This document shows, piece by piece, positions 2,936 to 41,700 of a DNA stretch of 64,000 nucleotides (position 1 is its first letter; each line of letters starts with the position of its first letter). The translations under genes were made by a program, and so were the position numbers. Source of the DNA: Haplodiscus bocki (Eukaryota); assembly GCA_965655095.1 (NCBI GenBank), contig OZ296651.1, forward strand, positions 45,012,001 through 45,076,000, read 5' to 3'. The notes beneath the pieces were generated by a model. That model made no database searches. It saw only the letters and a list, made by a program, of their open reading frames with translations, and had not been told where the DNA came from.

Positions 2936-2944
2936 ACCCAAAAT

Positions 2945-5885: not shown

Positions 5886-5899
5886 AGATTAAAATCTCG

Positions 5900-8900: not shown

Positions 8901-9319
8901 ATTCTTTGTTTGATGTGGGTGAACAGTGATAAAAGTTGCTATTTGAGCTTGTGCCTATTAGAGAACAAAGGTGAAGGTTCCTACTTGCTAACTAGTAATT
9001 AGTAGCGCAAAAATATTTGTCAAACAAGCAACCATAGCCTATTGAACCTAAGCCTCCATTACAAAACCAGCAGAACTGACGAAACATTCAACCATATGGA
9101 TAAATTTGAGGAAATACATGTTTATATCATTATAATCAAGGTTTGGGATAGATTTTTTGAATTAACAAGGAAATTTGTGTAAAGAAAAAGATCCAAAGGA
9201 ACAAATGATGGAAAAGTTGAATTTGCGGTGAAGATGAAAGCGTTAATTGCCGCGAAAATGATGGGAAAAACACAGTAGAATGGGGCTTAGTTGTCTGACA
9301 TTTTTATTCAGGCTACTTC

Positions 9320-12300
9320 GGAACATTACATGTGGTAATGCTTTCAGAAAATTTCAATTTTCAATTTCTCGCTCCTCCTGATCTTCAAGTTTCTTTTATT
9401 CCATCTACAACTCTATCGATAGCTTTGATTTTTTGGTGAAGAACTCAAATGAAAAACTGTTAGTGTTGTTCCCTCCATCACAATCCTGAAAGTTGGAAAA
9501 TTACAAAAAACGTCCATTTGTTGACCATTCTCGAAAATACAATTGATTTTTTTCCGTGATTTGAGACTTGCTGTCTCTCATCAAGGTCCTAATCGGAAGT
9601 TTTTTTTGCGGAGGAGGTTCCAAAAAAGAAGCTTAAACTCTGATCATTGCCTCAAAATCCTGAAGGTCCAAAAATTCCAAAAACTGTTGTTGATTTTGAT
9701 TTCACTCTGTTTTAAAATTTATTTCTTTTGTAATTATGGGCTGGATCTCTCCCTACAGAGTCTGAATCGACAACTTGTTTGTGAAATGGGCAATTGGATT
9801 GCAAAATGTCAATAATTTTCCCATGAACCATGAAATTGGCGGAAACAGTTTTTCACTCATTACCCAAAATCAGTTTCACTAGTAATCAGAGGCTTGATGT
9901 GATATTCCAAGATCCCTAGTTTTACATTTGAAGAGCATTCGATCTGGAAAGATCACTTTTTTACCTGTTCATCAATTGTCAGACAGACCCAAAATTTGAA
10001 AAATTACTATAATTTTGGAATGTTCAGATTTTCAAAACTCAACTATATCCGTGAATACAGGTTTGATTTCATCAATTAGTGTCTACTTTAAAAGATTTAC
10101 TTTCGAAGAGGAGCCTTTGATTGAAAAAACAAATGTCTAAAATAGCGTCAAACTTCTGATTTTCTCAATTTCCCGAAGGTGCTTTTGAAAAACAATCATC
10201 TCGACTTCGAAAATCTTCTCTTTTTCCTAACTACAGTCTTCATTTCTTCATTAGAGTGTCGAGCGACATTTTTACACTTGCAGAACAATCGCATTCAAAA
10301 ATAAATAAATTGACTTTTGCGACAGAACTTGCTCGTCCGAACGTTCTAGGTGCTGTAACTTTTGATTCAGTTCGTTTTCCAAAGTCTTTTTCTCTTAATT
10401 TCCTGTTTGACTATTTCGATCCATTTCTCCATCAAATGCTTTCATTTTTTGGTACACCCCTTCTCTCAAAAAATATCATTTCAATTCTTTCCATCAGACT
10501 CTAGACAGTACGAAGGGAAAAATTTTGTGTATAATCCTGATTTTCTTGGCAATGCAAATCGCTTTTCTTCTTTACTAGACACTTGATGTCTTTCATCAAG
10601 GCCCTAATCGGGAGTTTTTTTGTGGCGGACGCCTCTAATATTAATCCAATTTGTGATCATTGCGTCAAAGTTCCGATTGTCCAAACATTCCAAAAACTGC
10701 TATTCAATTTGACTTCTGTCCGTTTTCAGACCCATTTTCGTAGTAGGGGCTTGATTCTTTGCCTTAAAGTCTAAGTGGACAGCCTTTTCTCGGGTGAACA
10801 AATTGATTGCAATTTAACTCAATCATTTTCTTTGAATCACGACGCGACAGTAAGAAGTTTTCAAAAAGCTTTTTTTTGTTCTGATTTCGCCTCAAGTTTT
10901 GAAAATCAAACATGCCGGTAAATAGAGGCTTGATATGTTCTATCAATGTCTCGAACAACAACCTTACCGTTAATTAGCATTCGTTTTGGAAACTTTGTGT
11001 TTTGTTTTCTCTCTCAATTTCCTGACGGTCCCAATTTCCTAGCAAATGCTAACCTATTCGATTATTTTTGAATTGCAAACACTTTTTGTCCCGAGAATGC
11101 TGGTTTGGCTTCTCCAATTGAGGTCCTCATCGAAAGCATTTTCTTGAGAAAAAAGTTTTGATTAAAAATCGTTTCTCATCTCTGCGCCAAATTCCTGAAA
11201 TTCCGAGCGTCCAAAAAAAACCTCAAAAAAATGTCATCTCAGTTTTGAAACTCAATTTCATCCGTAACTCAGTTTTTTATCCTTTCATCAGGGTGTCAGG
11301 AGATAGATTTACACCAGGAGAAAACTCGACATGCAACACAATCATTTTCACCTTTGCATCCAATCCTGATGGTCCCAAAGCTCCAAGTGCTATAAATTTT
11401 TATTCATTTCGAATTTCAAACTGTGTCTTCGTCGTAACTGCAAGTTCTATTTCTTTCTTTAATTTCTCCGTCAAAAACATTCAGTTCTCGGAAAACCAAT
11501 TTTCGGGAAATTTGTCTTTTTTGTTTTTTTCATCAGAGTTAGAGTCTTGCAAGATTGATTGTTACTAAAAAGGTGTATATTGATGATTTTTGCTGATGAA
11601 ACAATTCATTTTACTCGGAAAGTACAGCCTTGACATCTTCCATCAAGGTGCGCATCGAATGGTTTTGTTTGTGGATGAGTGATCTAAAGAAGAATCCGTT
11701 CTGTGATCACTGCGATGAAACCTTGATGGTTCAAAAATTTCCGAAAACTGCAAAGAAGTTCAATTATTTCACTTCAAAATTTGTTTCTATTGGTAATTAC
11801 CAGCCTACTGGCTTCCTTTCTGCCAATAGATTGTCAACTGAGAAGTTTACACTTGCAGAAAAAACAATATCAAAAACAATTAGTTGGACATTTCCATCAG
11901 AATTCTGCTGGTCCCAACGTTCTCGGTGCTGTAAGATCTGATTCTTTACCTTTTCCAAACACTCTTCTTCGTAATTTCAGGATTGATTCCTCCCATCCAA
12001 TAGTCCATCAAAAGCTTTCGATTAATGCTAAACCTTTTCACTGACAAAATATCAATTCAATTCCTTCCATCAGAATCCAAAACGGTACGAAGTGGAGAAA
12101 CCATGTTTAAAAAGCTGTTTTTCCTTAATGAAAGAAATCATTTTACTCCGAAAAAAGAGACTTGATGTCTTCCAAGAACGTCCATTTCCAAATTCTCCTC
12201 TTTGTGGACGAAAATTGCAAAAAAAGGTTGAGTCTGCAATCACTGCGTTGAAACTGTGGTGGCTCAAGAATTTCGAAAATTGCAAATATTATTCAATGCG

Positions 12301-15110
12301 AATGCTTCATCTTGACTCCGAAAGTCTTTTTTATTCTCAATTATAGACCTATAGGCTTTACTCCCTTCATTAGGGTGTCAGTCGACAACTCCACATTTTC
12401 GAAATAAAAATAAAGCTCTCTGACTTTTGCTTTAGAAGCCTGCAGGTTCCTACGTTCCAGGTGCAATTGTTTAAGATTCCTTCTGTTCTTTGAACGCATT
12501 TTCCTTCGTAACTCTAGATTTGATTCGTTTTATCAATTTCTCAATCAAAAGCTTTCATTTTTTCCTAAACCACATAACTCGAAACTAAACAAATACATTC
12601 TTTCCATCAGAGTCCATATAGTACGAATGTTACGAACAAGGTTTACAAATTTGAGTTATCTCAATTTTACACCTAGTGTTTCTTTCCTAACTAGAAACTT
12701 GATGTCTTTCATCAACGTCCTACTGGAAAATCCTACTTTGTGCAGGAGAATTCTAGTAGAAATCTTCATTTTGATATTTGCGTCATTATCAAGAGGGTCC
12801 AGGTTTTCCAAAAATTGCTAATAAATTTCTAATTCTCTGCTTTGTCAAAGTTTCATCTTTTGTAACTGCATGCCGGATCTCTCCCGTCAGAATCTCAATC
12901 GATATCTTTTTAGGAGTAAAAAGTTCGATTCCAAATCTATCGACTATTATTCTGTGAATCTTGAAGTTGACGGTACGACAGCTCGGGATACTGTTTATAA
13001 TTCGAATTTGTATAACTAAAACCAACTTTTCTCATAACAAAAGGCTTGATGTGTTCCATCACGGTTTCAATCGACACGCAGAAAGTTGAAGAGCATTCAT
13101 TTTAAAAAAAATCATTTTTTACCCCTGTTTCAACATTTTTACGTTCCCAAAGTTCGAAAAGAAGCACCCACATTAGAAAAATATCGACTTCCGAACTAGC
13201 AGCTGATTTATATTTGAAGTGCCCTTGAACAAAATCATTTATATTGATCCCTCCGTCGAAGTTTTGACGCTCCCAAGGTTGGAGAAATGGCTTTTACTTT
13301 GCATCAAATTCTTTTTTGAGACTCAATTTCGTCGAAAATACCGGTTTTTTTCTTCAACTAAAGTGTTTATTGAAAGCAAATAATTGAAGGAAAGAGTTTG
13401 ACCTAAAATCAATTATTTTTCTCGATGTCCAAATGAATGTTTTCTTAGGTGTTCAGAAGGTACCCTCAATTTGGACTCATCTCGATTTCAAAACTTATTT
13501 CATTGCGCGACTACAGTTTTTATTTCATTCAAAACTGTGGCGGGCTACAGCTTTAAATTTTTTGAACATTCAAACGAAAAAGCAATCACCTTGATCTTAG
13601 CGTCAACATTGGGCTGTTCCCAATGTTCCAGGTGCCATTGCCATTGATTTCTCCCGACTTTGAATCTTTTTTTTTCTCCGTAATTTCTGATTTGATTCAT
13701 TCTAACAGTTTCTTAGAATCTCGATTTCGAAACTTTTTCAATCCGTGACTACTGGTTAGTTTTTTTCTACAAGTTGCATGGCGACAACTTAACACTTGTA
13801 CAAGACTCGATTTTCAAAAAAGGCATTCATTTTGATCATTGCATCTAAAACGTGCTGGTCCCAACGTTATAGTTGCTACTACTAAAGGTTCATCTCGTTT
13901 TTGGAACTACTTTTTCTCCGAAAATTAGAATTGGATTCCTTCCATCATTTTGTCAATCGAAATCTCTCAGTTTCTCCAAAACAACTTTCATGAAAAAAGG
14001 TATAAAACATCTATCAGAATACGAATATTACAAAATTTACAAATACTATTTTCAAGGTTGATTTTTCTCGATTTTGGAGTTTTTTCCGTAAATAATGGCG
14101 TGATGTCTTCCATCAAGGCCCTAATCGAAAATTAGTTTTCTGTAGAGAAGGATTTCAATAAAATTGTGTACTGTGATCATAGCTTCAAAATCGTAGGGGT
14201 CCAGATTTTCCAAAACACTGCTACGAATTTTGACTCTTCTGCATTTCCTTACTCGTGTCTTCCGTAGCTACAGTGTAGACCTCTCTGTTCAGTGCCTCCT
14301 TCGACAACTTTTTTGGGGGTAAACAATTCGATTTCAATTTTATCGTTTTCTGATTTATGAATCGCGAAGTTGACGGTGTGAGGGTTTCAGAAACTGATGT
14401 TTTTTTTATTTTGTCTCGAACACTCAAATCAAATTTCGCCATGACAAGGGGCTTGATGTGTTCTAACGAGGTCTCAATCGGCACTTCTATACTTAGAGCT
14501 CATTCGTTTTCAAAACAAAAGTTTTTATCCCTCCCTCAAATTTCTGATGGTCCCAACTTTTTGATAAAAGCAATTACCTTATATTAGTTTCGACTTCCAA
14601 ACCAAGTTTAGTCCGTATTTGCCGGTTCGATTCCTCCATTTAAGTTCCTGATAGGAAGCAAGACTTTGAGGGAGAAGGAATTGATCGAAGAAAAAGTTTT
14701 CATTTGCGACAAAATCTTGATAGACCCAAGTGTACAAAAAATGCCTCTAAAACGGATTCATCTCGATTCCTAAACTCATTTCAATCCGTGACTAACGGTT
14801 TGTTTCTTGATTTACAGTTTCAGGTGACAGCCTTACACTGAAGAAGACTCGATTTAAAATTCATTTGATCTGAACATCAAAATAGTGCTGAGCATGTAAA
14901 TTGAGCTAGTTCTAATGTTTCAATTGCTGATACTAATCATTCATCTCATTTTCTCAAAATCTCTCTTCTCCGGAGCTTCAAGTTTAATTTAATCCATCAA
15001 TTTTTCAGAAAACTGACATTTTTGTTTCTTTTTCAGAATAGTTTCAGTACGAAGGTTACAAAAATCGTTTTCAGTAGTGATTATTCTCGATAACCCCTAT
15101 GCTTTTCCTC
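9320..15110 (+). repeat. Family 1, old layer: diverged 6-mer (A-B-C-D-E-F, ~1.02-1.05 kb) with local rearrangements
   Basis: Type E heads (..agacttgatgtcttccatcaaggccctaatc) at ~9555, 10572, 11620, 12150, 12688, 14085, 15113; type A heads at ~9885, 10921, 13041, 14445. Copies alignable by type but strongly diverged. Confidence 0.8.
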
Positions 15111-17150
15111 TGTGTCTAGAGACTTGATGTCTCTTTTCAAGGCACTAATCGAAAGTTTTTCTCCACCGGAGGAACATCCCCTAAAAATCTGAAGCTGTGA
15201 TCGTTGTTTCAAAACTATGGTGATCCCAACATTCTAAAACTTTGTAAACTCTTCGACTTCTTCCTTTTTCAAACTCATCTTTTTCGTAGCTGAAGGCTAG
15301 ATCAATCAAATTGAAGTCTCCATCGACTGCATTTTTCAGATTAAATAATTCGATTGTAATGAAGTTGCTTAATTTTTCCGGAATCCTGATAATCACGGTA
15401 GGAAAACTCCAGAAACTGCCGCCTTTTTAATTCTTATCCCTAAGTGAAAAACCAATCTCCCAGAGAATAAAAGCTCGCCGTGTTCCATGAAGGTCTCAAC
15501 CCGCAGTTTAACACTTGAAGAGCATTCGTTTCAAAAAATTTTTCAACACGATGCCTCCATCAAGTTTCAGAAGAACCCAAGATTTGAGAAGTGGCTTTAC
15601 TTCAAAGAACTTTCTAATTTTCAACTCGTTTTTGTCCATGAAAACCCGTTTGGTTTCCTCATCTAAAGTCTTCAACGAAAGCAGTAACTTCGGAGGAAAA
15701 GTTTCGCTGAAAATCATTTTCCACTTATCGATAAATCAGAAAAATGATTTTTCCCGGGTGTTGAAGAAGGTGCCCTCAAACTAATCTCATCTCGATTCCA
15801 AAACTCAATTCAATGCGCGACTACAGGCTTTATTCCTTTCAATACAGTGGCAGGCGACAGCTTTACATTTTTTGAACAATCAAAGGAAGAGTCATTCACT
15901 TTGACCCTAGCATCAAGATTGGGCTGGTCCCAACGTTCTAAATGCCAGTACCTTTGAATCCTCCTGACGTTGAAGCTATTTTTTCTCGGTAATTTTTGAT
16001 TTGGATCATTCCAACATTTTCTCATTCGAAATCTTCCAATCTCCTCAACACCATTTTTACGGAATACTTTTTGTTCTTTACTTCCAACAGAATGCGGACA
16101 CTACGAAGCTTACGTAAATTGTTCATTTTGTTGGTTTTTCTTGATTAAAAAACAATGATTTCATCCGCGACTTTTTCTTTCAATGTCGTAATCGGCGTTT
16201 TGTTTCTGTGGAGAAGCACTCCATTGAAAAGTTTTTTTTGTAGTAATTGCGGCGAATTAAAGAGTTCACAATTTCCAGAAACTGCTAATAATTCGAAATT
16301 CTCTTTTTTCAAATTTTTTTTTCGTAGCTACGGGCTAGACTGCTCCCACAAGAGCCCAAATTGACATTTTTTTGGGGTGACGATTGGCTTTCGACTTTTA
16401 CGATTATTTTTCTATGAATCATTAAGTTGATGATATGAGAGTTTCACTAACTGCTTTCTTTTTCATTTTGTCTCAAAAAACAGATCAACTTTCCCCGTAA
16501 TGAGAGGTTTGATGTGTTCCCTCAAAATCTCAATCAACAATTGTACACTTGAAGAGCTTTCGTTTGTAAAACACATTAACTGTTCGATCCCTCTACTAAA
16601 ATTCTGAAGGTCCAAGGTTCGAGAACGGTGCCGGTTTGAATCTCCCGTTAAAAGTCTTCATCGGAAGCATAACATTAAGGGACGAGGGTGTGACCAAAAA
16701 ACTGTTCCTTCTTTTTTGGGCACAATGTGTGATTTTCCAGAGTGTCCTGAAGGTGCCCTTGAAAATGATTTATATCGATTTGAAAAATCTTCTAGATCCG
16801 TGACAACAGGTTCATTTCTTTCAAATTATTGTCTGGTGGCTCCATAACTTTAGTTGAACACTCGACACTGGAGTTACTCAGTTTCTTTTGCGGCAAAATC
16901 CTGCTAGTCTCAGCGTTCCAGGTGCTATTACTTAGGATTCTACTCAATTGTCGAAATTACTGTTCAGTGTATCCTCAGGTTTTATTTAGTCTATCAATTT
17001 CTCCATCGAAAGTGTTCATTTCCCGGAAGACTTTTTGATTGAAGAGATATCAATTTTTTCTTCCTCCAGAATCCTGCCAGTACGAACAATACAACAATGG
17101 CTTTTTGAAACTGAAAGCTTTTGATAACATTTTTTAATTCTCTCCAAAAC
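15111..17150 (+). repeat. Family 1: single intact 12-mer (two differentiated 6-mers, 2,034 bp)
   Basis: E1 (tagagacttg 15117), F, A, B, C, D, shortened E2 (~16165), F2, A1 (~16500), B1, C1, D1, next E1 (tagaagcttg 17151). Confidence 0.75.
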
Positions 17151-20100
17151 TAGAAGCTTGATCTCTAACTTCAAGGTCCTAATCGAAATTTTTTTCTGTC
17201 GAGCTTGAATCCAATGAAAAACGTGATTGTGATCGTTGCGTAAAAGTTATGATGATCCGAAATTTACAAAACAGGATTAAATAGTTGAATCTTTGCCTCT
17301 TTCAACTCACGTTTTCCGTGGCCACGGGCAGGACCTCTCACATGAGAGTCTCATTCGACAGTTCTTAATTCTGATTTTGCCTCAAAAATGAAAATCAACT
17401 GTTCCCGTAAAAAGAAGCTGGCTCTGTTCCATCAAGGTCTCAAACAGCAGTTTTACGGTTGAAGAGAATTTGATCCAAAAAATCATTTACATTGATCCCT
17501 CAGTGAATATTCCGACGGTCCCAGGGTTCGAGGAAAGTCTTTTACTTTCAATCAAAATCTTTTTTGAAACTCAATTTTGTCAAAAATGCCGGTTTGGTTT
17601 CTTCAACTAAAGTCTTTATCGAAAGTAATAAAATAGGAAAAGGGGTTTTTTGAGAATCCTTTTTTTTATGTCAAAGCCCCGATTCTCCCGTGTGGTCAGA
17701 AAAAGCCCTCAAATTTGAATCCTCTCGAATTCAAAAATCACTTCAATGTGCGACTACAGGCTTTAATTCTTTCAATACGGTGGCAGGCGACAGCTTTGTG
17801 ATTTTTAAACACCCAAAGAAAAAGTAATTCTTTCTGATCCTAAAATCAAAATCGTGCTGGTCACAATGATCCGAGTGTCAATGGCAATGATTCCTCCCGG
17901 CTTCGAAACTATCCTACCGTAATTTCTGGTTTGATTCGTTCCAACAACTTCTCAATGGGAATGTTCCAATCTACTCAAAACCAATTTTTTATTTTTTCTA
18001 TTGTCTATTACTTCCAACAGAATCCAAACACTACAGATGTTGCAAAACTTCTTGAAATCGTTAATTTTTGAATAAAACCAGACATTACAATGGTTACAAA
18101 ATTTGTTTACCTCGTTGATTTTCAAAAAAAACTCATTTTCTTACAATTTTTTCCGCCGGGTTCGTACTTAGAACTTTTAATATTTGTGGAGGAGCATTCC
18201 AATGAAACGTTTCAAAGTGAGTGTCCAGATTTTCCAAAAACGTCAAAAAGTTTTAACTTCCCTGCTTTTTCAAAAGCTTTTTTTCGCAGCTAAGAGCTAG
18301 GTCGGTCCCACAAAGTTCCAAATCGACAGTTTTTTGGGAAGGGACGATTGGGTTTCAACTTTTACCATTGCTTCTCTAGGAGCCATGAAGTTGAAAATAC
18401 GGGGGTTCCAGTAACTGCTTTCTTCCTGTTTTGTTTCGAAAACCACATGCAACTTTCGCCGTAATGACAAGTTTGATCTGTTCCTTCAAGTTCTCAACCG
18501 ACAGTTTTACACTTGAAGAGAATCCAATTTTAAAAAAATTGATTATTTTGAACCCTCTACTAAAACTTCGCAAGTCCGACGTTCGATAACAAGCTTTTCT
18601 TTCCCCAGAATCCTGACAGTACGAAGAATACAAAAAAACGCTTTTTGAAACTGATAATTCTTTATTTTATTTTTTACTTTTTTCCGTAACTAGATGTTTG
18701 GTGTCTACCGTCAAGGTCTTAATCTAGAGTTTTTTTTCCGTTGAGCAGGAATATTTTGAAAAACGTTATTGTGGTGGTTGCTTAAAAATTATGGTGATCC
18801 CAAAATTATGAAACGTGCTAAAATTTTCGAAGCTTTCCCTTTTTCGAACTCATGTTTTTCGTACCTACGGGCGGGATCTCTCACAGCAGAGTCTCATTCG
18901 ACAGATTTTCAGAGGAAAATTTTGAATTGCAAACTCTTTGCTTTTTTTTCTGAATCACGACACTCACAGTACGATTTTTCTAGAAAGTTCTCTTAACTCT
19001 GATTTGATTTTGGCTCAAAAAAAGAAATCAATTTTCCCTCAAAAAGAAGCTAGCTCCATTCCATCAAGGTTCCAAACAGCAGTTTTACGCTTGAGGAAGA
19101 CTTGATTGAAAAAATCGCTTACAATGATCCGTCAAGGATGTTTCCGACGGTTCCAAAACTCCATGAAGGGCTTTTACTTCGAGTCAAATTTTTTTGGAAA
19201 CTCATTTTGGTCAAAAATGCCAGTTTGGTTTCTTCAACTGAAGTCTTTATCAAGAGCATTGAATTGAAGGAAAGGGGTTCTTCGTGAATCCTATATCTTT
19301 TTTAATGTCAAAGTCCCGATTTTCCCGTACGTTCAGAAAGTGCCCTCAAACTTGAATCATCTCCTTTCCAAAATTCATTTCAATGCGCCACTACAGGCTC
19401 CATTCTTTTCAATATCGTGGCAGGCGACAGCGTTACGATTTTTGGGTCACTGAACAAAAAAGTCATTGATTTTGATCCTAAAATCAGAATCGTGCTGATC
19501 ACAATGATCCGAGTGCCATTACCAATCATTCCTACCTACTTCGAAATTATCTTTCCCTGTAATTCCTGGTTTGATTAATTCCAACAATTTCTCAATGGGA
19601 ACCTTTCAATCTATGCAAAACCAATTTTTTTAAAATTTTTCGAATGTCTATTACTTTCACCAGAATCCAGACACTACAAAAATGCAAAACTTGTTTAAAA
19701 TGTTGATTTTCGAAAAAAAACACATTTTCATGCAGTTTTTTCCGTCGAAGTTGTACTTAGTACTTTTAATATTTGTGGAGAAGCATTCCCATGAAACGTT
19801 TCAATGTGATATTTGCGTCAATATCAAGAGTGTCCTGATTTTTCAAAAACTTCAAAATCTTTCAACTTCCCTGCTTTTTCAAAAACTTTTTATCGTAGCT
19901 AAGGGCTGGGTCGATACCACAAAACTCCAAAACGACAGCAATTTGTGATTGAACGATTGGGTTTTCACCTGTACGAATCTTTTTCTACGAATCCTGAAGT
20001 TGACCAAACGAGGGTTCCAGTAAGTGCTTTTTTTGTTTGAGTTCAAAAACCAAAGTCAACTTTCCTCACAATGATAAATTTGATGTGTTCATTCAAGATC

Positions 20101-23100
20101 CCAATAGACAATTTTACACTTGAAGAGCTTCAAATTCCTAAAAAATCGACTCTTCGGAAAACTCTTCTGAAACTTAGGAAGTTGAACTTGAGAAAACAAG
20201 CTTTGTTTCTCCAGAATCCTGACGGTACGAAGAATACAAAAATGCTTTTTCGAAACAGAAAAATCGTGATAGTACTTTTACCTTTTTCTAAAACTAGAAG
20301 CTTGATGTTTACCTTCAAGGTCCTAATCTAGAGCTTCTTCTGAGGAGCAGGATTCCATTGAAAAACGTTATTGTGAGAGTTGCTTAAAAATTATGGTGAT
20401 CCCAAAATTATGAAACATGCTAAATTTTTCGAAGCTTTGCATTTTTCGAACTCAAATTTTACGTACCTACGGGCGGGATCTCTCACAGCAGTGTCTAATT
20501 CGACAGTTTTTTCAGAGGAAAATTTTAAATTGCAAACTCTTTGCTTTTTTTTCTGAATCACCACACTCACGGTACGATTTTTCTAGAAAGTTCTCTTAAT
20601 TCTGATTTGATTTTGGCTCAAAAAAAGAAATCAATTTTCCCACAAAAAGAAGCTAGCTCCATTCCATCAAGGTTCCAAACAGCAGTTTTACGCTTGAGGA
20701 AGATTTGATTTTAAAAATCGTTTACAATGATCCGTCAAGGAGGTTTCGAACGGTTCCAAAACTCCATGAAGGGCTTTTACTTCGAGTCAAAATTTTTTGG
20801 AAACTCATTTTGGTCAAAAATGCCGGTTTGGTTTCTTCAACTAAAGTCTTTATCAAGAGCATTGAATTGAAGGAAAGGGGTTGTTCGCGAATCCTATATC
20901 TTTTTCTATGTCAAAGTCCCGATTTTCCCGTACGTTCAGAAAGTGCCCTCAAACTTGAATCATCTCGTTTCCAAAATTCATTTCAATGCGCGACTACAGG
21001 CTCTATTCTTTTCAATATCGTGGCAGGCGACAGCGTTACATTTTTTGGGTCACTCAAAGAAAAAGTCATTGATTTTGATCCTAAAATCGAAATCGTGCTG
21101 ATCACAATGATCCGAGTGCCATTACCAATCATTCCTACCTACTTCGAAATTATCTTTCCCCGTAACTCCGTAACTCTTGGTTTGATTAATTCCAACAATT
21201 TCTCAATGGGATTCTTTCAATCTAAGCAAAACCATTTTTTTATAGTTTTTCGAATGTCTATTACTTTCACCAGAATCCAGACACTACAAAAATGCAAAAC
21301 TGTTTAAAATGTTGATTTTCGAAAATAAAACACATTTTCATGCAGTTTTTGCCGTCGAGGTCGTACTTAGTACTTTTAATATTTGTGGATGAGCATTCAG
21401 ATGAAACTTTTTAATGTGATATTTGCGTCAAAATAAGGAGTGTCCTGATTTTTCAAAAACTTCAAAATCTTTCAACTTCCCTGCTTTTTCAGAAACTTTT
21501 TATCGTAGCTAAGGGCTGGGTCGATACCACAAAATTCCAAAACGACAGCATTTTGGGATGGAACGATTGGGTTTTAACCTGTACAAATCTTTTTCTACGA
21601 ATCCTGAAGTTGACGATACGAGGGTTCCAGTAAGTGCTTTTTTTGTTTGAGATCAAAAACCAAAGTCAACTTTCCTCACAATGATAAATTTGATGTGTTC
21701 ATTCAAGATCTCAATCGACAATTTTACACTTGAAGAGCTTCCAACTCCTAAAAAATCGACTCCTTGGAAAACTCTTCTGGAACTTTGGAAGTCGAACTTG
21801 AGAAAACAAGCTTTCTTTCACCAGAGTCCTGACGGTACGAAGAATACAAAAATGCTTTTTCGAAACTGAAAAATCGTGATGGTACTTTTACCTTTTTCTG
21901 TAACTAGAAGCTTGACGTTTACCTTCAAGGTCCTAATATAGAGCTTCTTCTGAGGAGCAGGATTCCATTGAAAAACGTTATTGTGATAGTTGCTTAAAAA
22001 TTATGGTGATCCCAAAATTATGAAACATGATAAATTTTTCGAAGCTTTGCCTTTTTCGGACTCATGTTTTTCGTCCCAACGGGCGGGATCTCTCACAGCA
22101 GAGTCTCATTCAACAGTTTTTAAAGAGGAAAATTTTAAATTGCAAAGTTTTTGCTTTTTTTTCTGAATCACGACACTCACAGTACGATTTTTCTAGAAAG
22201 TTCTCTTAACTCTGATTTGATTTTGGCTCAAAAAAAGAAATCAATTTTCCCTTAAAAAGAAGCTAGCTCCATTCCATCAAGGTTCCAAACAGCAGTTTTA
22301 CGCTTGAGGAAGACTTGATTGAAAAAATCGTTTACAATGATCCGTCAAGGATGTTTCCGACGGTTCCAAATCTCCATGAAGGGCTTTTACTTCGAGTCAA
22401 ATTTTTTTGGAAACTCATTTTGGTCAAAAATGCCGGTTTGGTTTCTTCAACTAAAGTCTTTATCGAGAGCATCGAATTGAAGGAAATGGGTTCTTCGTGA
22501 ATCCTATATCTTTTTCTATGTCAAAGTCCCGATTTTCCCGTACGTTCAGAAAGTGCCCTCAAACTTGAATCATCTCGTTTCCAAAATTCATTTCAATGCG
22601 CGACTACAGGCTCTATTTTTTCAATATCGTGGCAGGCGACAGCGTTACGATTTTTGGGTCACTGAACAAAAAAGTCATTGATTTTGATCCTAAAATCGAA
22701 ATCGTGCTGATCACAATGATCCGAGTGCCATTACCAATCATTCCTACCTACTTCGAAATTATGTTTCCCCGTAACTCCTGGTTTGATTAATTCCAACAAT
22801 TTCTCAATGAGAACCTTCCAATCTATGCAAAACCATTTTTTTAAAGTTTTTCGAATGTCTATTACTTTCACCAGAATCCAGACACTACAAAAATGCAAAA
22901 CTTGTTTAAAATGTTGATTTTCGAAAAAAAACACATTTTCATGCAGTTTTTGCCGTCGAGGTCGTACTTAGTACTTTTAATATTTGTGGATGAGCATTCC
23001 TATGAAACTTCCAATGTGATATTTGCGTCAACATCAGGAGTGTCCTGATTTTTCAAAAACTTCAAAATCTTTCAACTTCCCTGCTTTTTCAAAAACTTTT

Positions 23101-26100
23101 TATCGTAGCTAAGGGCTGGGTCGATACCACAAAATTCCAAAACGACAGCATTTTGGGATGGAACGATTGGGTTTTAACCTGTTCAAATCTTTTTCTACGA
23201 ATCCTGAAGTTGACGATACGAGGGTTCCAGTAACTGCTTTTTTTGTTTGAGTTCAAAAACCAAAGTCAACTTTCCTCACAATGATAAATTTGATGTGTTC
23301 ATTCAAGATCTCAATCGACAATTTTACACTTGAAGAGGTTCCAACTCCTAAAAAATCGACTTTTTGGAAAACTCTTCTGGAACTTTGGAAGTCGAACTTG
23401 AGAAAACAAGCTTTCTTTCTCCAGAATCCTGACGGTACGAAGAATACAAAAATGCTTTTTCCAAACTGAAAAATCGTGATGGTACTTTTACCTTTTTCTG
23501 TAACTGGAATCTTGATGCTTACCTTCAAGGTCCTAATCTAGATCTTCTTCTGAGGAGCAGGATTCCATTGAAAAACGTTATTGTGATAGTTGCTTAAAAA
23601 TTAAGGTGATCCCAAAATTATGAAACATGCTAAATTTTTCGAAGTTTTGCCTTTTTCGAACTCATGTTTTTCGTACCTACGGGCGGGACCTCTCACAGCA
23701 GAGTCTCATTCGACAGTTTTTCCAGAGGAAAATTTCAAATTGCAAAGTTTTTGCTTTTTTTTCTGAATCACGACACTCACAGTACGATTTTTCTAGAAAG
23801 TTCTCTTAACTCTGATTTGATTTTGGCTCAAAAAAAGAAATCAATTTTCCCTTAAAAAGAAGCTAGCTCCATTCCATCAAGGTTCCAAACAGCAGTTTTA
23901 CGCTTGAGGAAGACTTGATTGAAAAAATCGTTTACAATGATCCGTCAAGGATGTTTCCGACGGTTCCAAATCTCCATGAAGGGCTTTTACTTCGAGTCAA
24001 ATTTTTTTGGAAACTCATTTTGGTCAAAAATGCCGGTTTGGTTTCTTCAACTAAAGTCTTTATCGAGAGCATCGAATTGAAGGAAATGGGTTCTTCGTGA
24101 ATCCTATATCTTTTTCTATGTCAAAGTCCCGATTTTCCCGTACGTTCAGAAAGTGCCCTCAAACTTGAATCATCTCGTTTCCAAAATTCATTTCAATGCG
24201 CGACTACAGGCTCTATTTTTTCAATATCGTGGCAGGCGACAGCGTTACGATTTTTGGGTCACTGAACAAAAAAGTCATTGATTTTGATCCTAAAATCGAA
24301 ATCGTGCTGATCACAATGATCCGAATGCCATTACCAATCATTCCTACCTACTTCGAAATTATGTTTCCCCGTAACTCCTGGTTTGATTAATTCCAACAAT
24401 TTCTCAATGAGAACCTTCCAATCTATGCAAAACCATTTTTTTAAAGTTTTTCGAATGTCTATTACTTTCACCAGAATCCAGACACTACAAAAATGCAAAA
24501 CTTGTTTAAAATGTTGATTTTCGAAAAAAAAACACATTTTCATGCAGTTTTTGCCGTCGAGGTCGTACTTAGTACTTTTAATATTTGTGGATGAGCATTC
24601 CTATGAAACATCCAATGTGATATTTGCGTCAACATCAGGAGTGTCCTGATTTTTCAAAAACTTCAAAATCTTTCAACTTCCCTGCTTTTTCAAAAACTTT
24701 TTATCGTAGCTAAGGGCTGGGTCGATACCACAAAATTCCAAAACGACAGCATTTTGGGATGGAACGATTGGGTTTTAACCTGTTCAAATCTTTTTCTACG
24801 AATCCTGAAGTTGACGATACGAGGGTTCCAGTAACTGCTTTTTTTGTTTGAGTTCAAAAACCAAAGTCAACTTTCCTCACAATGATAAATTTGATGTGTT
24901 CATTCAAGATCTCAATCGACAATTTTACACTTGAAGAGGTTCCAACTCCTAAAAAATCGACTTTTTGGAAAACTCTTCTGGAACTTTGGAAGTCGAACTT
25001 GAGAAAACAAGCTTTCTTTCTCCAGAATCTTGACGGTACGAAGAATACAAAAATGCTTTTTCCAAACTGAAAAATCGTGATGGTACTTTTACCTTTTTCT
25101 GTAATTAAAAGCTTGACGTTTACCTTCAAACTCCTAATCTACAGCTTCTTCTGAGGAGCAGGATTCCATTGGAAAACGTTATCGTGATAGTTGCCTAAAA
25201 ATTATGGTGATGCCAAAATTATGAAACATGCTAAATTTTTCGAAGCTTTTCCTCTTTCAAACTCACGTTTTTCATACCTAGAGGCGGGATCTTTCACTTC
25301 AGAATCTCATTCGACAGTTTATTCAGAGGAAAAATATAAATTGCAAACTTTTTGCTTTTTTCTGAATCACGACACTCACAGTACGATTTTTCTAGAAAGT
25401 TCTCTTAGCCCTGATTTTGGCTCAAAAAAGGAAATCAACTTTTCCCTTAAAAAAACTGGCTCTGTTCCATCAAAGTTCCAAGCAGCAGTTTTACGCTTTG
25501 AAGAAGATTTGATTCAAAAAATCTTTTACAATGATCCATCAATGAAGTTTCCGACGGTCCCAGGATTCGAGGAAAGGCTTTTACTTTGACTGAAATTCTT
25601 TTTTGAAACTCATTTTTGTCGAAAGAGCTGGTTTGATGTCTTCAACTAAGGCCTTTATCCAGAGCAATAAATAAATGGAAAGGGTTTGTTTGAGGATCCT
25701 ATATTCTTATCTATGTCAAAGTCCCGATTTTCCCGTATGTTCAGAACGTGCCCTCAAACTTGCATCATCTCAATTTCAAAATTCATTTCAAAGCGCGACT
25801 ACCGGCTCTATTTCTCTCAATACCCTGGCACGAGACAGCGTTACATTTTTTAAACACTCAACGAAAAAGTCATTGATTTTCATCCAAAAATCGAAATCGT
25901 GCTGGTCACAATGATCCGAGTGCCATTACCAATCATTCCTACCTACTTCGAAATTATCTTTCCCCGTAACTCCGTAACTCTTGGTTTGATTAATTCCAAC
26001 AATTTCTCAATGGAAACTTTCCAATCTATGCAAAACCAATTTTTTATAGTTTTTCGAATGTCTATTACTTTCACCAGAATCCAGACACTACAAAGAATGC

Positions 26101-29100
26101 AAAACTTGTTTAAAATGTTGTTTTTCAAAAAAAAACACATTTTCATGCAGTTTTTTCCGTCGAGGTCGTACTTAGTACTTCTAATATTTGTGGAGGAACA
26201 TTCCAATGAAACGTTTCAATGTGATATTTGCGTCAAAATCAAGAGTGTCCTGATTTTTCAAAAACTTCAAAATCTTTCAATCTCCCTGCATTTTCAAAAA
26301 CTTTTTATCGCAGCTAAGGGCTGGGTCGATCACACAAAATTCCAAAACGACAGCAATTTGGGATGGAACCATTGGGTTTTAACCTGTACGAATCTTTTTC
26401 TACGAATCCTGAAGTTGACGATACGAGGGTTCCAGTGAGTGCTTTTTTTTGAGTTCAAAAACCAAAGTCAACTTTCCTCACAATGATAAATTTGATGTGT
26501 TCATTCAAGATCTCAATCGACAATTTTACACTTGAAGAGCTTCCAACTCCTAAAAAGTCGACTCTTTGGAAAACTCTTCTGGAACTTTGGAAGTCGAACT
26601 TGAGAAAACAAGCTTTCTTTCTCCAGAATCCTGACGGTACGAAGAATACAAAAATGCTTTTTCGAAACAGAAAAATCGTGATGGTACTTTTACCTTTTTC
26701 TGTAACTGGAAGCTTGATGCTTACCTTCAAGGTCCTAATCTAGATCTTCTTCTGAGGAGCAGGATTCCATTGAAAAACGTTATTGTGATAGTTGCTTAAA
26801 AATTAAGGTGATCCCAAAATTATGAAACATGCTAAATTTTTCGAAGTTTTGCCTTTTTCGAACTCATGTTTTTCGTACCTACGGGCGGGACCTCTCACAG
26901 CAGAGTCTCATTCGACAGTTTTTCCAGAGGAAAATTTCAAATTGCAAAGTTTTTGCTTTTTTTTCTGAATCACGACACTCACAGTACGATTTTTCTAGAA
27001 AGTTCTCTTAACTCTGATTTGATTTTGGCTCAAAAAAAGAAATCAATTTTCCCTCAAAAAGAAGCTGGCTCCATTCCATCAAGGTTCCAAACAGCAGTTT
27101 TACGCTTGAGGAAGATTTGATTGAAAAAATGGTTTACAATGATCCGTCAAGGAGGTTTCCGACGGTTCCAAAACTCCATGAAGGGCTTTAACTTCGAGTC
27201 AAAACTTTTTTGGAAAATCATTTTGGTCAAAAATGCCGGTTTGGTTTCTTCAACTAAAGTCTTTATTGAGAGCATTGAATTGAAGGAAAGGGGTTGTTCG
27301 CGAATCCTATATCTTTTTCTATGTCAAAGTCCCGATTTTCCCGTACGTTCATAAAGAGCCCTCAAACTTGAATCATCTCGTTTCCAAAATTCATTTCAAT
27401 GCGCGACTACAGGCTCTATTCTTTTCAATATCGTGGCAAGCGACAGTGTTACAATTTTTGGGTCACTCAACGAAAAAGTCATTGATTTTGATCCTAAAAT
27501 CAAAATCGTGCTGATCACAATGATCCGAGTGCCATTACCAATCATTCCTACCTACTTCAAAATTATCTTTCCCCGTAACTCCGTAACTCTTGGTTTGATT
27601 AATTCCAACAATTTCTCAATGGGAACCTTCCAATCTATGCAAAACCATTTTTTTATAGTTTTTCGAATGTCTATTACTTTCACCAGAATCCAGACACTAC
27701 AAAGAATGCAAAACTTGTTTAAAATGTTGTTTTTCAAAAAAAAACACATTTTCATGCAGTTTTTTCCGTCGAGGTCGTACTTAGTACTTCTAATATTTGT
27801 GGAGGAGCATTCCAATGAAACGTTTCAATGTGATATTTGCGTCAAAATCAAGAGTGTCCTGATTTTTCAAAAACTTCAAAATTTTTCAATTTCCCTGCAT
27901 TTTCAAAAACTTTTTATCGCAGCTAAGGGCTGGGTCGATCACACAAAATTCCAAAACGACAGCAATTTGGGATGGAACGATTGGGTTTTAACCTGTACGA
28001 ATCTTTTTCTACGAATCCTGAAGTTGACGATACGAGGGTTCCAGTGAGTGCTTTTTTTGTTTGAGTTCAAAAACCAAAGTCAACTTTCCTCACAATGATA
28101 AATTTGATGTGTAAATTCAAGATCTCAATCGACAATTTTACACTTGAAGAGCTTCCAACTCCTAAAAAATCGACTCTTTGGGAAACTCTTCTGGAACTCT
28201 GGAAGTCGAACTTGAGAAAACAAGCTTTCTTTCTCCAGAATCCTGACGGTACGAAGAATACAAAAATGCTTTTTCGAAACTGAAAAATCGTGATGGTACT
28301 TTTACCTTTTTCTGTAACTAGAAACTTGATGTTTACCTTCAAGGTCCTAATCTAGAGCTTCTTCTGAGGAGCAGGATTCCATTGGAAAACGTTATTGTGA
28401 TAGTTGCTTAAAAATTATGGTGATCCCAAAATTATGAAACATGCTAAATTTTTCGAAGCTTTGCCTTTTTCGAACTCATGTTTTTCGTACTTAGAGGCGG
28501 GACCTTTCACATCAGAGTCTCATTCGACAGTTTATTGAGAGGAAAAATACAAATTGCAAACTTTTTGCTTTTTTCTGAATCACGACACTCACAGTACGAT
28601 TTTTCTAGAAAGTTCTCTTAACCCTTATTTTGGCTCAAAAAAGGAAATCAACTTTTCCCTTAAAAGAACTGGCTCTGTTCCATCAAAGTTCCAAGCAGCA
28701 GTTTTACGCTTTGAAGAAGATTTGATTCAAAAAATCTTTTACAATGATCCATCAATGAAGTTTCCGACGGTCCCAGGATTCGAGGAAAGGCTTTTACTTT
28801 GACTGAAATTCTTTTTTGAAACTCATTTTTGCCGAAAGAGCTGGTTTGATGTCTTCAACTAAGGCCTTTATCTAGAGCAATAAATAAATGGAAAGGGTTT
28901 GTCTGAGGATCCTATATTCTTATCTATGTCAAATTCCCGATTTTCCCGCATGTTCAGAACGTGCCCTCAAACTTGCATCATCTCAATTTCAAAATTCATT
29001 TCAAAGCGCGACTACCGGCTCTATTTCTCTCAATACCCTGGTTCGAGACAGCGTTACATTTTTTAAACACTCAACGAAAAAGTCATTGATTTTCATCCAA

Positions 29101-32100
29101 AAATCGAAATCGTGCTGGTCACAATGATCCGAGTGCCATTACCAATCATTCCTACCTACTTCGAAAATATCTTTCCCCGTAACTCCGTAACTCTTGGTTT
29201 GATTAATTCCAACAATTTCTCAATGGGAACCTTACAAACTATGCAAAACCATTTTTTTATAGTTTTTCGAATGTCTATTACTTTCACCAGAATCCAGACA
29301 CTACAAAGAATGCAAAACTTGTTTAAAATGTTGTTTTTCAAAAAAAAACACCTTTTCATGCAGTTTTTTCCGTCGAGGTCGTACTTAGTACTTCTAATAT
29401 TTGTGGAGGAGCATTCCAATGAAACGTTTCAATGTGATATTTGCGTCAAAATCAAGAGTGTCCTGATTTTTCAAAAACTTCAAAATCTTTCAATTTCCCT
29501 GCATTTTCAAAAACTTTTTATCGCAGCTAAGGGCTGGGTCGATCACACAAAATTCCAAAACGACAGCAATTTGGGATGGAACCATTGGGTTTTAACCTGT
29601 ACGAATCTTTTTCTACGAATCCTGAAGTTGACGATACGAGGGTTCCAGTGAGTGCTTTTTTTTGAGTTCAAAAACCAAAGTCAACTTTCCTCACAATGAT
29701 AAATTTGATGTGTTCATTCAAGATCTCAATCGAAAATTTTACACTTGAAGAGCTTCCAACTCCTAAAAAAATCGACTCTTTGGAAAACTCTTCTGAAACT
29801 TGGGAAGTCGAACTTGAAAAAACAAGCTTTCTTTCTCCAGAATCCTGACGGTACGAAGAATACAAAAATGCTTTTTCCAAACTGAAAAATCGTGATGGTA
29901 CTTTTACCTTTTTCTGTAACTAAAAGCTTGATGTTTACCTTCAAGCTCCTAATCTAGAGCTTCTTCTGAGGAGCAGGATTCCATTGGAAAACGTTATTGT
30001 GATAGTTGCTTAAAAATTATGGTGATCCCAAAATTATGAAACATGCTAAATTTTTCGAAGCTTTTCCTCTTTCAAACTCACGTTTTTCATACCTAGAGGC
30101 GGGATCTTTCACATCAGAGTCTCATTCGACAGTTTATTCAGAGGAAAAAAAAATTGCAAACTTTTTGCTTTTTTCTGAATCACGACACTCACAGTACGGT
30201 TTTTCTAGAAAGTTCTCTTAACCCTGATTTTGGCTCAAAAAAGGAAATCAACTTTTCCCTTTAAAAAAACTGGCTCTGTTCCATCAAAGTTCCAAGCAGC
30301 AGTTTTACGCTTTGAAGAAGATTTGATTCAAAAAATCTTTTACAATGATCCATCAATGAAGTTTCCGACGGTCCCAGGATTCGAGGAAAGGCTTTTACTT
30401 TGACTGAAATTCTTTTTTGAAACTCATTTTTGTCGAAAGAGCTGGTTTGATGTCTTCAACTAAGGCCTTTATCCAGAGCAATAATTAAAAGGAAAGGGTT
30501 TGTTTGAGGATCCTATATTTTTATCTATGTCAAATTCCCGTTTTTTCCGTATGTTCAGAACGTGCCCTCAAACTTGAATCATCTCAATTTCAAAATTCAT
30601 TTCAAAGCGCGACTACCGGCTCTATTTCTCTCAATACCCTGGCACGAGACAGCGTTACATTTTTTAAACACTCAACGAAAAATTCATTGATTTTCATCCA
30701 AAAATCCAAATCGTGCTGGTCACAATGATCCGAGTGCCATTACCAATCATTCCTACCTACTTCGAAATTATCTTTCCCCGTAACTCCGTAACTCTTGGTT
30801 TGATTAATTCCAACAATTTCTCAATGGAAACTTTCCAATCTATGCAAAACCAATTTTTTATAGTTTTTCGAATGTCTATTACTTTCACCAGAATCCAGAC
30901 ACTACAAAGAATGCAAAACTTGTTTAAAATGTTGTTTTTCAAAAAAAAACACATTTTCATGCAGTTTTTTCCGTCGAGGTCGTACTTAGTACTTCTAATA
31001 TTTGTGGAGGAACATTCCAATGAAACGTTTCAATGTGATATTTGCGTCAAAATCAAGAGTGTCCTGATTTTCAAAAAACTTCAAAAACTTTCAACTTCCC
31101 TGCTTTTTAAAAAACATTTTAGCGTAGCTAAGTTCTAGGTCGCTCCCACAAAGTTCCAAATTGACAAATTTTGGGAAACGAACGATTTGGTTTCACTTTT
31201 TAAGCTATCTTTTTCTACGAATCATGAAGTTGACGATATAAAGGTTCCAGTAACTGCTCTCTTTTTGTTTTGTTTCAGAAACCAAATTCCAGTTTCCCCG
31301 TAATGAGAAGTTTGATGTGTCCATTCAAGTTCTCAGTCGACAGTTTTACACTTGAAAAGATTCCAATTCTGAAAAAATCGACTCCTTTGAAAACTCTACT
31401 GAAACCTCGGAAGTCCAACTTTCGAAAACAAGTTCTCTTTCTCCAGAATCCTGACAAAACGAAGAATACAAATTGTGTTTTTTGAAACTGAAAATTCTTG
31501 ATAATATTTTTCACTTTTTTCCGTAACTAGAAACTTGACGTCTACCTTCAAGGTCCTAATCTAAAGTTTTTCTCTGGAGCAGGGTTCCAATGAAAATCGT
31601 TATTGTGATGGTTGCGTAAAAATTTTGATTATCCCAAAGTTATAAAACATACTAAAATATTCGGACCTTTCCCTTTTTCAAACTAATTTTCCTCGTAACT
31701 ACGGGCGGGATCTCTCACATCAGAGTCTCTTTCGACAGTTTTTTCGGAAGAAAAAATTAAATTGCAAAATTTTGCTTTTTTATCTGAAACACGACACTCA
31801 CAGTACGATATTTCTAGAAAGTTCTCTTAACTCTGAATTTGGCTCAAAAAAAGAAATCAACTTCTTCCTTAAAAAGAAGCTGGCTCTGTTCCAACATTGT
31901 TCCAAACAGCAGTTTTACGCTTGAAGAGGATTTGATCAAAAAAATCAAATAAAAGGATCCGTCAATGAAGTTTCCGACGGTCCCAGGAATCGAGGAATGG
32001 CTTTTATTTTGAGTCAAAATCTTTTTTGGAACTCATTTCTGACAAAAAATTGGTTTGGTGTCTTAAACTAAAGTTTTTATCCAGAGCAATAAATTAAAGG

Positions 32101-41200: not shown

Positions 41201-41700
41201 TAATCTTAAATCTTCAAAAAAGATCCAAAATTTTCGTAACCGGTAAGTCCAGAATTGAGTAAAAGGTTTCGTTTTTCATTGCGTTCAAACCAATGCTCCG
41301 CCGTAACCAGAAGATTGGTTTCCTCCATAAAAGCTTTGCTCTTGAATATTGAAGCTCCAAAGAGAAATTGGTCGGAAAAATTGCTTCTCCAGATCCATGC
41401 GTCAAACTCCTGATAGAGACGTTGTTCCAGGAACTGCAGTTATTTTTGAACCATCACGTCTCTCAAATCATGTTTTCGCGTTAACAGCGGGCTGGATTTT
41501 CTCCATCATTTTCATAATTGAATTTTCCATATAAGTACAATAAGTTCGAATTAGTGAATCCAATCACTTCTTCCTCCCATCAAAAATGTGAGAGACCCAA
41601 ACCTCTAGGAACTGCGATCTTTATTGATTCTTTTCGCTACTCAAGCTAGTGTGCCTCCGTAACTACCGGTCTGATTTCTAACATCATGCAATCAATTCCA
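38276..41700 (+). repeat. Family 2: 8-mer HOR (a-h, ~1,410-1,418 bp), ~2.4 units
   Basis: Type b heads at ~38472, 39890, 41300; ORFs 39939 and 41349 are near-identical and 1,410 bp apart; eight monomer heads per period. Confidence 0.9.

What the first reader, a model, noticed from the sequence alone, without database searches (positions are those of the whole stretch)
15111..18700. Birth of the 1.6-kb 9-mer is preserved next to it: 6-mer -> 12-mer -> 9-mer by one ~425 bp deletion
Seen: in the intact 12-mer, A1 runs ...gtccaaggttcgagaac (16627), then B1, C1 and half of D1 before caattttttcttcctccagaatcctgccagtacg (17051). From ~18590 onward every unit joins these directly (gtccgacgttcgataac|aagcttttctttccccagaatcctgacagtacg), giving one anomalous ~220-bp A/D fusion monomer. 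2,034 minus ~425 gives ~1,605, the observed period. Inference: the undeleted precursor survives immediately left of its amplified descendant.
Basis: partly seen in the sequence, partly recalled or inferred. Interest (0 to 1): 0.72.

Follow-up and report, generated by a model that had tools for sequence, protein, structure and literature searches.

The report
Satellite repeat reshaped by one deletion
In this non-coding satellite DNA of an animal genome, a 2-kb unit of twelve 176-bp pieces lost about two and a half pieces in one event and the shortened 1.6-kb unit was then copied many times; one undeleted copy survives beside it, which is a clean but ordinary example of how such repeats evolve.

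Summary
Window 9.3-64 kb is a one-way, non-coding satellite of ~176-bp monomers. This is not human: the assembly is 1.5 Gb.

In 9472-38418 the monomers form an ordered hexamer H of ~1056 bp, monomer types m1-m6. U0 (15025-17043) is a pair of hexamers, H1 + H2, twelve monomers in all.

Every later unit, U1 to U12 (17044-36192), equals H1 plus the first ~580 columns of H2. The stub before W1 at 36565 carries the same joint. Each unit shows one contiguous 410-413-bp gap against U0 16631-17043, and a 216-223-bp fused monomer at the joint.

Trees give six monomer clades, each with at least 99% bootstrap support. They also show two subtypes for m1-m3 only, and place U0's H2 as sister to all truncated H2 copies. 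Copies on other chromosomes run unbroken through the breakpoint. The long form is therefore ancestral.

Corrections:
- U0 is a 33%-diverged collateral relic, not an intact precursor.
- U0 carries its own ~50-bp deletion abutting the breakpoint, so the original loss was about 465 columns, not 425.
- Deletion cannot be told apart from unequal exchange.

The kind of event is well known from primate alpha satellite (out-of-register deletions, hybrid monomers, layered arrays). The scan also noted a layered 1.53-kb satellite elsewhere in this genome.

The parts
1382..2893 (+). Isolated island of about 9 monomers of the same family, 6.4 kb left of the array
   Evidence: Monomer HMM hits with E down to 2.6e-19. 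Colinear with H columns 418-905, E 1.5e-40.
9319..15024 (+). Old, diverged hexamer copies L1-L8, several with their own deletions or rearrangements. L8 (14010-15018) and L5h (12601-13189) are H2-like; L6 (13198-13713) is H1-like.
   Evidence: nhmmer with the H profile; identities of 55-64%; trees.
15025..17043 (+). U0, the only full 12-monomer unit: H1 (15027-16077) plus complete H2 (16080-17043)
   Evidence: It is 66-67% identical to the 1.6-kb units.
16627..17043 (+). The 417 bp absent from every 1.6-kb unit: the rest of m4', then m5' and m6'
   Evidence: Single gap. The best paralogue in the window is only 57-62% identical. The tail clusters with L1/L2/L8 and not with H1 tails.
16586..16712 (+). 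m4' of U0, only 126 bp long, with a private ~50-bp deletion at 16626|16627 next to the unit breakpoint
   Evidence: hmmalign columns 515-660; monomer lengths.
17044..18595 (+). U1, the oldest deleted-form unit (1552 bp). It has its own 89-bp deletion in H1 near 17364.
   Evidence: 80% identical to all later units; H columns 311|402.
18575..18625 (+). First deletion junction: m4' stub (...GTTCGATAACAAGCTTTT) joined to the m6-end/m1 start (CTTTCCCCAGAATCC...)
18596..31435 (+). U2-U9, eight 1600-1612-bp units, 85-98.6% identical to one another, with 3.2-kb super-periods
31436..36192 (+). U10-U12, three 1578-1599-bp units. They form a second clade, 95-97% identical within it and 80-81% to U2-U9 and U1.
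36193..37610 (+). U13 (internally deleted unit) plus W1. The same junction precedes W1 at about 36565. W1 is an old H1-type copy at the right edge.
37620..38418 (+). W2, an old H1-like hexamer copy (H columns 3-802) flanking the array on the right
38274..64000 (+). Second array built from the same 176-bp monomers but arranged differently (periods 1410, 1931, 2105, 2828 and 3057 bp). It runs past the window end.
   Evidence: Hits up to C4:45091561.

Best explanation
This is non-coding satellite DNA evolving by the usual turnover of tandem repeats.

An old, genome-wide ~176-bp monomer had already formed an ordered hexamer H (m1-m6, ~1056 bp). At this locus neighbouring hexamers diverged into two alternating subtypes, H1 and H2. 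That gave a ~2-kb 12-monomer unit present in at least two to three periods (L8-U0H1-U0H2-U1H1...).

In one copy, a single illegitimate recombination event joined position ~45-50 of m4' to the m6'/m1 boundary. The two sites are in different monomer registers and share at most a short T-run or an imperfect ~15-bp similarity. About 2.65 monomers were lost. What remained was a 9-monomer, ~1.6-kb unit with one over-long (~220 bp) fused monomer.

That unit then spread by unequal exchange in at least two waves. An early wave left U1, W1 and the two clade founders about 20% apart. Later local bursts reached up to 98.6% identity, including two-unit blocks. Old copies were pushed to both edges. U0, just outside the amplified block, kept the undeleted H2.

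Shown: the single shared gap, the six monomer types, the two subtypes, the sister position of U0's H2, and the continuity of H in outgroup loci. Inferred: the order of events, the type of recombination, and amplification by unequal exchange.
For: One shared gap and junction in 13 unit boundaries.

Six monomer clades, each at least 99% UFboot, with m1-m3 split into H1 and H2 subtypes.

Head tree:
- (U0H2,(all truncated H2)) at 100/99 and 100/100.
- L8+L5h sister at 95/92.
- H1 clade at 99/97.

Tail tree: U0's extra segment groups with old copies L1/L2/L8, apart from H1 tails at 95/94.

The extra segment is only 57-62% identical to any paralogue. Orthologous U0-unit identity is 66-73%.

H is continuous across column 579 at loci on C4:65.75 Mb and C5:79.94 Mb and in the left-flank island.

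H2-type sequence occurs only in this array. Every other copy stops at query 546-547, which corresponds to 16626.

The fused monomer spans 216-223 bp at each junction.

The identity gradient runs from 66% (U0) to 80% (U1) to 85-98.6% in the centre, with 70% again at the right edge.

There are no ORFs of note, no Rfam hits, and all 308 monomers lie on one strand.
Against: Only one undeleted H1+H2 copy exists. The '12-mer array' therefore rests on subtype alternation among 55-64%-identical old copies. L8 is a mosaic: m1, m3 and m4 are H2-like, while m2 and m6 are H1-like.

U0 is itself damaged at the breakpoint. The exact breakpoints and any microhomology cannot be read.

No H2 tail is seen at the right end of the array. 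This fits deletion-first but does not prove it.

Divergence may overstate age if 'dead' array edges mutate faster (PMC9549924).
Confidence: 0.8

Rival explanations
1. Same junction, different mechanism. An out-of-register unequal sister-chromatid or homologue exchange duplicated a 1.6-kb segment of the 12-mer array, rather than an intrachromatid deletion followed by amplification.
For: The product junction is identical under both models. Later growth of the array needs unequal exchange anyway, as the 3.2-kb interleaved blocks show.
Against: A simple segmental duplication predicts that the intact H2 tail lies after the last copy. The right edge instead reads junction-W1(H1)-W2(H1-like), with no H2 tail. 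The tail could have been lost later, so this is weak evidence.
Confidence: 0.3
2. Reverse polarity. The 1.6-kb form is ancestral and U0 gained 417 bp by partial duplication of its own H1 tail (15645-16056) or by insertion from another copy.
For: The extra segment is paralogous to H1 columns ~620-1030, which lie 982 bp upstream.
Against: It is only 57-62% identical to every candidate donor, less than U0 is to its orthologous units. Its m4', m5' and m6' each sit in their own monomer clade on long branches. It groups away from H1 tails at 95/94. Hexamers on other chromosomes are continuous through the breakpoint.
Confidence: 0.04
3. There was never a 12-mer repeat. U0H1 and U0H2 are just two neighbours in a heterogeneous hexamer array. 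One 1.6-kb stretch of that array happened to be amplified.
For: Left copies L1-L8 are nearly equidistant (55-64%) from H1 and H2. Only one full dimer survives.
Against: The complete U0H2 is followed by an H1-type copy (U1H1). The H1-H2 pair was therefore present at least twice before truncation. L8 and L5h group with H2, and L6 and W2 with H1, with good support. Shared 12-mers in the old part lie about 2.0-2.1 kb apart.
Confidence: 0.12
4. Assembly artefact: collapsed or mis-joined repeats create the odd long unit.
For: Satellites are error-prone in assemblies. There is an N gap at 7531-7730.
Against: U0 and its neighbours are 33-45% diverged from everything else and are therefore uniquely placeable. 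The N run is 7 kb away. The gap boundaries are the same in 13 independent copies.
Confidence: 0.02

Closest known systems
Structural variants of primate alpha-satellite higher-order repeats with hybrid monomers (Uralsky et al. 2019, PMC6447721; review PMC9549924)
   Same: A derived HOR arises from a longer master HOR by one out-of-register deletion that removes whole monomers plus parts of two others. This leaves a hybrid monomer at the joint, and the variant is then amplified.
   Different: The monomer family and host are unrelated (176 bp, invertebrate-like 1.5-Gb genome). In alpha satellite the hybrid usually keeps the ~171-bp length (PMC9549924). Here the joint is out of monomer register and the fused monomer is ~220 bp. 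HOR copies here are far more diverged.
Layered ('expanding') satellite arrays with old copies at the edges (PMC9549924)
   Same: Identity rises from both edges (U0 66%, U1 80%, W1 ~70-76%) to the centre (up to 98.6%). The relic of the earlier state sits at the flank.
   Different: The array is only ~29 kb (family 1). There is no evidence that it is a centromere. Layers are single units rather than large blocks.
HORs built by doubling of a smaller HOR, e.g. alpha-satellite 12-mer or 16-mer units derived from pentamers (own knowledge, not checked here)
   Same: A hexamer doubled to a 12-mer, with the two halves diverging into subtypes.
   Different: The halves here are only 57% identical, and just one full copy survives.
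1.53-kb layered macrosatellite noted elsewhere in this genome (scan note s1-376458)
   Same: Same genome, a locus-specific kb-scale tandem array with old ends and a young middle.
   Different: A different locus and unit. Whether it is built from the same 176-bp monomer was not tested.

Membership tests
Satellite DNA with higher-order repeat (HOR) organisation | Head-to-tail monomers of one length class in one orientation | tested here: met
   308 monomer-HMM hits, all on the + strand, with modal spacing of 170-180 bp from 9319 to 64000.
Satellite DNA with higher-order repeat (HOR) organisation | Distinct monomer types in a fixed order. Copies of the multimer are more alike than monomers within it. 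| tested here: met
   Six clades, each at least 99% UFboot. Monomer types are 51-63% identical against 80-98.6% between 1.6-kb units.
Satellite DNA with higher-order repeat (HOR) organisation | Non-coding | tested here: met
   Only short ORFs of 91 aa or less, not conserved in frame. No Rfam family matched.
Derived HOR variant by out-of-register deletion with hybrid monomer (as defined in PMC6447721) | One contiguous run of monomers missing relative to the master HOR, with the same breakpoints in all copies | tested here: met
   A 410-413-bp gap at U0 16631/16634-17043 in U1-U12. The same junction sequence occurs at 13 boundaries.
Derived HOR variant by out-of-register deletion with hybrid monomer (as defined in PMC6447721) | Hybrid monomer at the joint, usually of normal monomer length | tested here: inconclusive
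   A fused monomer is present, but it is 216-223 bp instead of ~176 bp. The fusion is met; length conservation is not.
Derived HOR variant by out-of-register deletion with hybrid monomer (as defined in PMC6447721) | The long form is ancestral (polarity) | tested here: met
   Outgroup loci are continuous through the breakpoint. U0H2 is sister to all truncated copies. The extra segment is not close to any donor.
Centromeric satellite | Association with the centromere or CENP-A, or a single large array per chromosome | not testable with these tools
   The monomer family occurs as many short arrays on many chromosomes. There are no chromatin or cytological data.
Primate/human alpha satellite | ~171-bp alpha monomer sequence in a primate genome | not tested
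   The assembly is 1.5 Gb in 6626 contigs, so it is not human. The monomer is 176 bp. No sequence comparison with alpha satellite was run, and no membership is claimed.

The most novel reading that the evidence does not exclude
The short palindromic motif in monomer type m4 (GTTCGAnAAnAAGCTTTT, H columns ~570-579) may be a recurrent breakage or recombination hotspot that seeds new repeat periods. Three independent rearrangement edges lie within about 10 columns of each other: U0's private 50-bp deletion, the 1.6-kb unit junction, and the older L5h|L6 junction at ~13165. My rough scan-statistic estimate is p ~0.015 for 3 of ~8 edges.
Probability: 0.15. Interest if true: 0.45.

Novelty: new member of a known kind. 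Interest (0 to 1): 0.3.

Why it matters
This is a compact, fully sequenced case outside primates in which three successive states of one satellite lie side by side in 29 kb: hexamer, doubled hexamer, and a truncated 9-monomer unit. The states can be ordered by trees and by outgroup copies. That makes it a useful teaching or benchmark example for HOR-detection software, because TRF and BLAST both miss the 176-bp monomer. It does not reveal a new mechanism and has no evident function.

Tried and rejected
- TRF reports nothing in the array, because periods exceed 500 bp and monomers are too diverged.
- BLAST self-comparison of U0 finds only the ~1-kb shift and no 176-bp period.
- Windowed Smith-Waterman scans were first spoiled by overlapping windows. 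When repeated they showed only the ~1-kb and ~530-bp peaks. The 530-bp peak comes from the short L3/L4 units.
- Raw autocorrelation gave only a weak 172-176-bp signal, z ~4. The profile autocorrelation settled the question.
- Earlier scan notes for this genome suggested Helitron-like chains joined at a GACCACC core. I found 4 matches against 2.8 expected, none in family 1, so I rejected that reading here.
- No coding reading is supported, and there is no Rfam family.
- I built a sequence-only covariance model of the monomer (R1) to map the family genome-wide. The genome search failed twice. I used DNA searches instead, which give only lower bounds.
- The spacer 2800-9500 has no terminal repeats. 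It holds only old dispersed repeats of 66-76% identity.
- I could not show that the dispersed ~2-kb monomer blocks are a transposon. No shared non-monomer flanks were found.
- I did not identify the organism.
- The N run at 7531-7730 was left as it is.
Full report
**What the window is.** The window is G000:C4:45012001-45076000 of a 1.5-Gb animal assembly in 6626 contigs. It is not human, and nothing here was treated as human. From about 9.3 kb to the window end the sequence is AT-rich (35-38% GC) and non-coding. It is highly repetitive at kilobase periods. The nearest identical 12-mers lie 1600-1612 bp apart from 18.6 to 31.4 kb and 1578-1581 bp apart from 31.4 to 36.2 kb. Further right they lie 1410, 1931, 2105, 2828 and 3057 bp apart. 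TRF sees none of this.

**The observation.**
- BLAST of 15000-19000 against young units shows that 15025-16626 aligns end to end with one 1.6-kb unit at 67%.
- 17044-18576 aligns with the next unit at 71-74%.
- The 417 bp between them (16627-17043) has no counterpart.
- In a multiple alignment of 14 consecutive units, every unit U1-U12 has one gap of 410-413 bp at U0 16631/16634-17043.
It is repeated, with substitutions, at every later unit boundary, including the one before W1 at about 36565.
- The observation therefore stands. The U0 period is 2019 bp and 2019 - 413 = 1606.

**The monomer and the hexamer.**
- U0 aligns to itself at a shift of 980-1054 bp, at 57% over 1037 columns with E 2e-31. 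A ~1-kb unit H therefore underlies everything.
- nhmmer with an H profile tiles 9472-38418 with full or partial H copies.
- BLAST and windowed local alignment do not see a 176-bp period.
- A profile of 18 diverged H copies has sharp circular autocorrelation peaks at 177, 351, 528, 705 and 879 of 1056 columns, at z 6.1-7.1.
- The six consensus segments align at 51-63% identity.
- A monomer HMM then finds 308 monomers, all on the + strand. They saturate 9319-64000 and also form an island at 1382-2893.
- U0 holds 12 monomers and each 1.6-kb unit holds 9. Monomer spacing is 216-223 bp at each unit junction.

A maximum-likelihood tree of 67 monomers gives six clades, m1-m6, each with at least 99% ultrafast bootstrap. 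The tree needs 5 label changes where 5 is the minimum. Within m1, m2 and m3 there are two subtypes. In each, U0's second-half monomer is sister to the second-half monomers of the 1.6-kb units.

**Polarity and order of events.** Trees of whole hexamer heads (columns 1-560) give two clades.
- The H2 clade is (U0H2,(all truncated H2)) at 100/99 and 100/100. The older copies L8 and L5h are its sister group at 95/92.
- The H1 clade (99/97) contains U0H1, W2, W1, U1H1 and the young H1 copies.
- Reading left to right, the subtypes alternate: L8(H2-like) - U0H1 - U0H2 - U1H1 - truncated H2. L6 (H1-like tail, sister to U0H1) lies further left. The 2-kb, 12-monomer period therefore existed in more than one copy.
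- The tail tree puts U0's extra segment with L1/L2/L8, apart from all H1 tails (95/94).
- The extra segment's best identity to any paralogue is 57-62%. That is lower than U0's identity to its orthologous units, 66-73%. It is therefore not a recent insertion.

Copies of the hexamer on other chromosomes, and in the left-flank island, run unbroken across column 579. This supplies an outgroup for the long state. In the whole genome, H2-type sequence occurs only in this array, and every copy other than U0 stops at query position 546-547, which corresponds to 16626. The truncation is thus a single derived event shared by U1-U12 and the W1 junction.

- First, U0 is not intact. Column-by-column alignment shows that its m4' is 126 bp long. 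It has a private gap of ~50 bp starting right after GTTCGAGAA (16626|16627).
- The truncated H2 copies continue 8-12 bp further (…AACAAGCTTTT). The H2-like L5h does the same (…AAGAAGCA), and L8 has a full m4.
- The unit's true left breakpoint therefore falls inside sequence that U0 has lost. In H columns the loss ran from ~579 to ~1045, about 465 columns or 2.65 monomers. The neat arithmetic with '~425' is partly luck.
- Second, the joint can be placed only to within 10-18 bp. The m4 text (GAnAAnAAGCTTTTAC) and the m6 end (GATATCAATTTTTTCT) resemble each other. A T-run microhomology is possible but not demonstrable at this divergence.
- Third, the joint is out of monomer register by ~45 bp. 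It is therefore not a homologous exchange between aligned monomers.
- Fourth, intrachromatid deletion and out-of-register unequal exchange give the same product. The absence of an H2 tail at the right end (junction-W1-W2) leans slightly toward deletion first.

**Amplification history.**

| Comparison | Identity |
|---|---|
| U0 vs the units | 66-67% |
| U1 vs all later units | ~80% |
| Within U2-U9 | 85-98.6% |
| Within U10-U12 | 95-97% |
| Between U2-U9, U10-U12 and U1 | 80-81% |
| U13 block (internally deleted U13 plus W1, the right edge) vs the units | 69-72% |

W1's H1 head is 74-76% identical to the H1 heads of the units. The pattern suggests an early spread followed by later local bursts, some in two-unit blocks (U5-U6 / U7-U8). 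Old copies lie at both edges and young ones in the middle.

**Comparison with what is known.** The monomer-by-monomer annotation of human alpha-satellite HORs describes out-of-register deletions that create hybrid monomers in derived HORs (PMC6447721). A review describes hybrid monomers, unequal crossover, and arrays layered by age from centre to periphery (PMC9549924). It notes that hybrids usually keep the monomer length. Here the fused monomer is ~45 bp too long. The finding is a new example of a known process in an unrelated satellite family. Another layered kb-scale satellite was already noted elsewhere in this genome (s1-376458).

**Wider context.** The array to the right (38274-64000 and beyond) is built from the same monomers in other arrangements. 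The monomer family is spread over many chromosomes as short arrays. Among them are ~2-kb blocks of about 12 monomers and a ~50-kb array with a ~1.22-kb period on C5.

**Verdict.** The process is ordinary satellite turnover, so interest is modest.

Noticed in passing
window 13165, 16626 and 18590 (H columns ~570-579, monomer m4 positions ~40-50): Three independent rearrangement edges fall within about 10 columns at a short palindromic motif (AAAAGCTTTT-like). They are the L5h|L6 junction, U0's private 50-bp deletion, and the 1.6-kb unit junction. A rough estimate gives p ~0.015. This could be a local breakage hotspot.
   Followed up: partly
window 38274-64000, continuing to at least G000:C4:45091561: A second array of the same 176-bp monomers, with different multimer arrangements and several nested periods (1410, 1931, 2105, 2828 and 3057 bp). 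Its 2105-bp units reach 98-99% identity at 58-64 kb.
   Followed up: partly
L013 (C1265), L014 (C4:65.75 Mb), L017 (C5:79.94 Mb), L019 (C10:35.32 Mb): Dispersed blocks of about 2 kb, each holding about 12 monomers of the same family. They are partly colinear with the hexamer and 59-63% identical to each other. I found no shared non-monomer flanks, so there is no sign of a transposon carrier.
   Followed up: partly
G000:C5:113586650-113636628: A roughly 50-kb tandem array with a ~1.22-kb period. Each unit carries a 73-bp stretch 81% identical to a monomer of the window's second array.
   Followed up: no
window 23400-29800: The 1.6-kb array has 3.2-kb and 4.8-kb super-periods. U6 and U8 are 97.1% identical, and U5 and U7 are 96.4% identical. 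Neighbouring units are only ~91% identical. Two-unit blocks were therefore duplicated.
   Followed up: partly
window 11561-12568: Two successive ~500-bp 'short hexamers' (head columns ~1-250 joined to tail columns ~760-1040). They are an older internal deletion variant that was itself duplicated, and they explain the ~530-bp periodicity peak.
   Followed up: partly
window 1382-2893 and 2894-9318: A 1.5-kb island of monomers is separated from the main array by 6.4 kb. The spacer contains old dispersed repeats (66-76% identical to copies on many chromosomes) and an N run at 7531-7730.
   Followed up: partly
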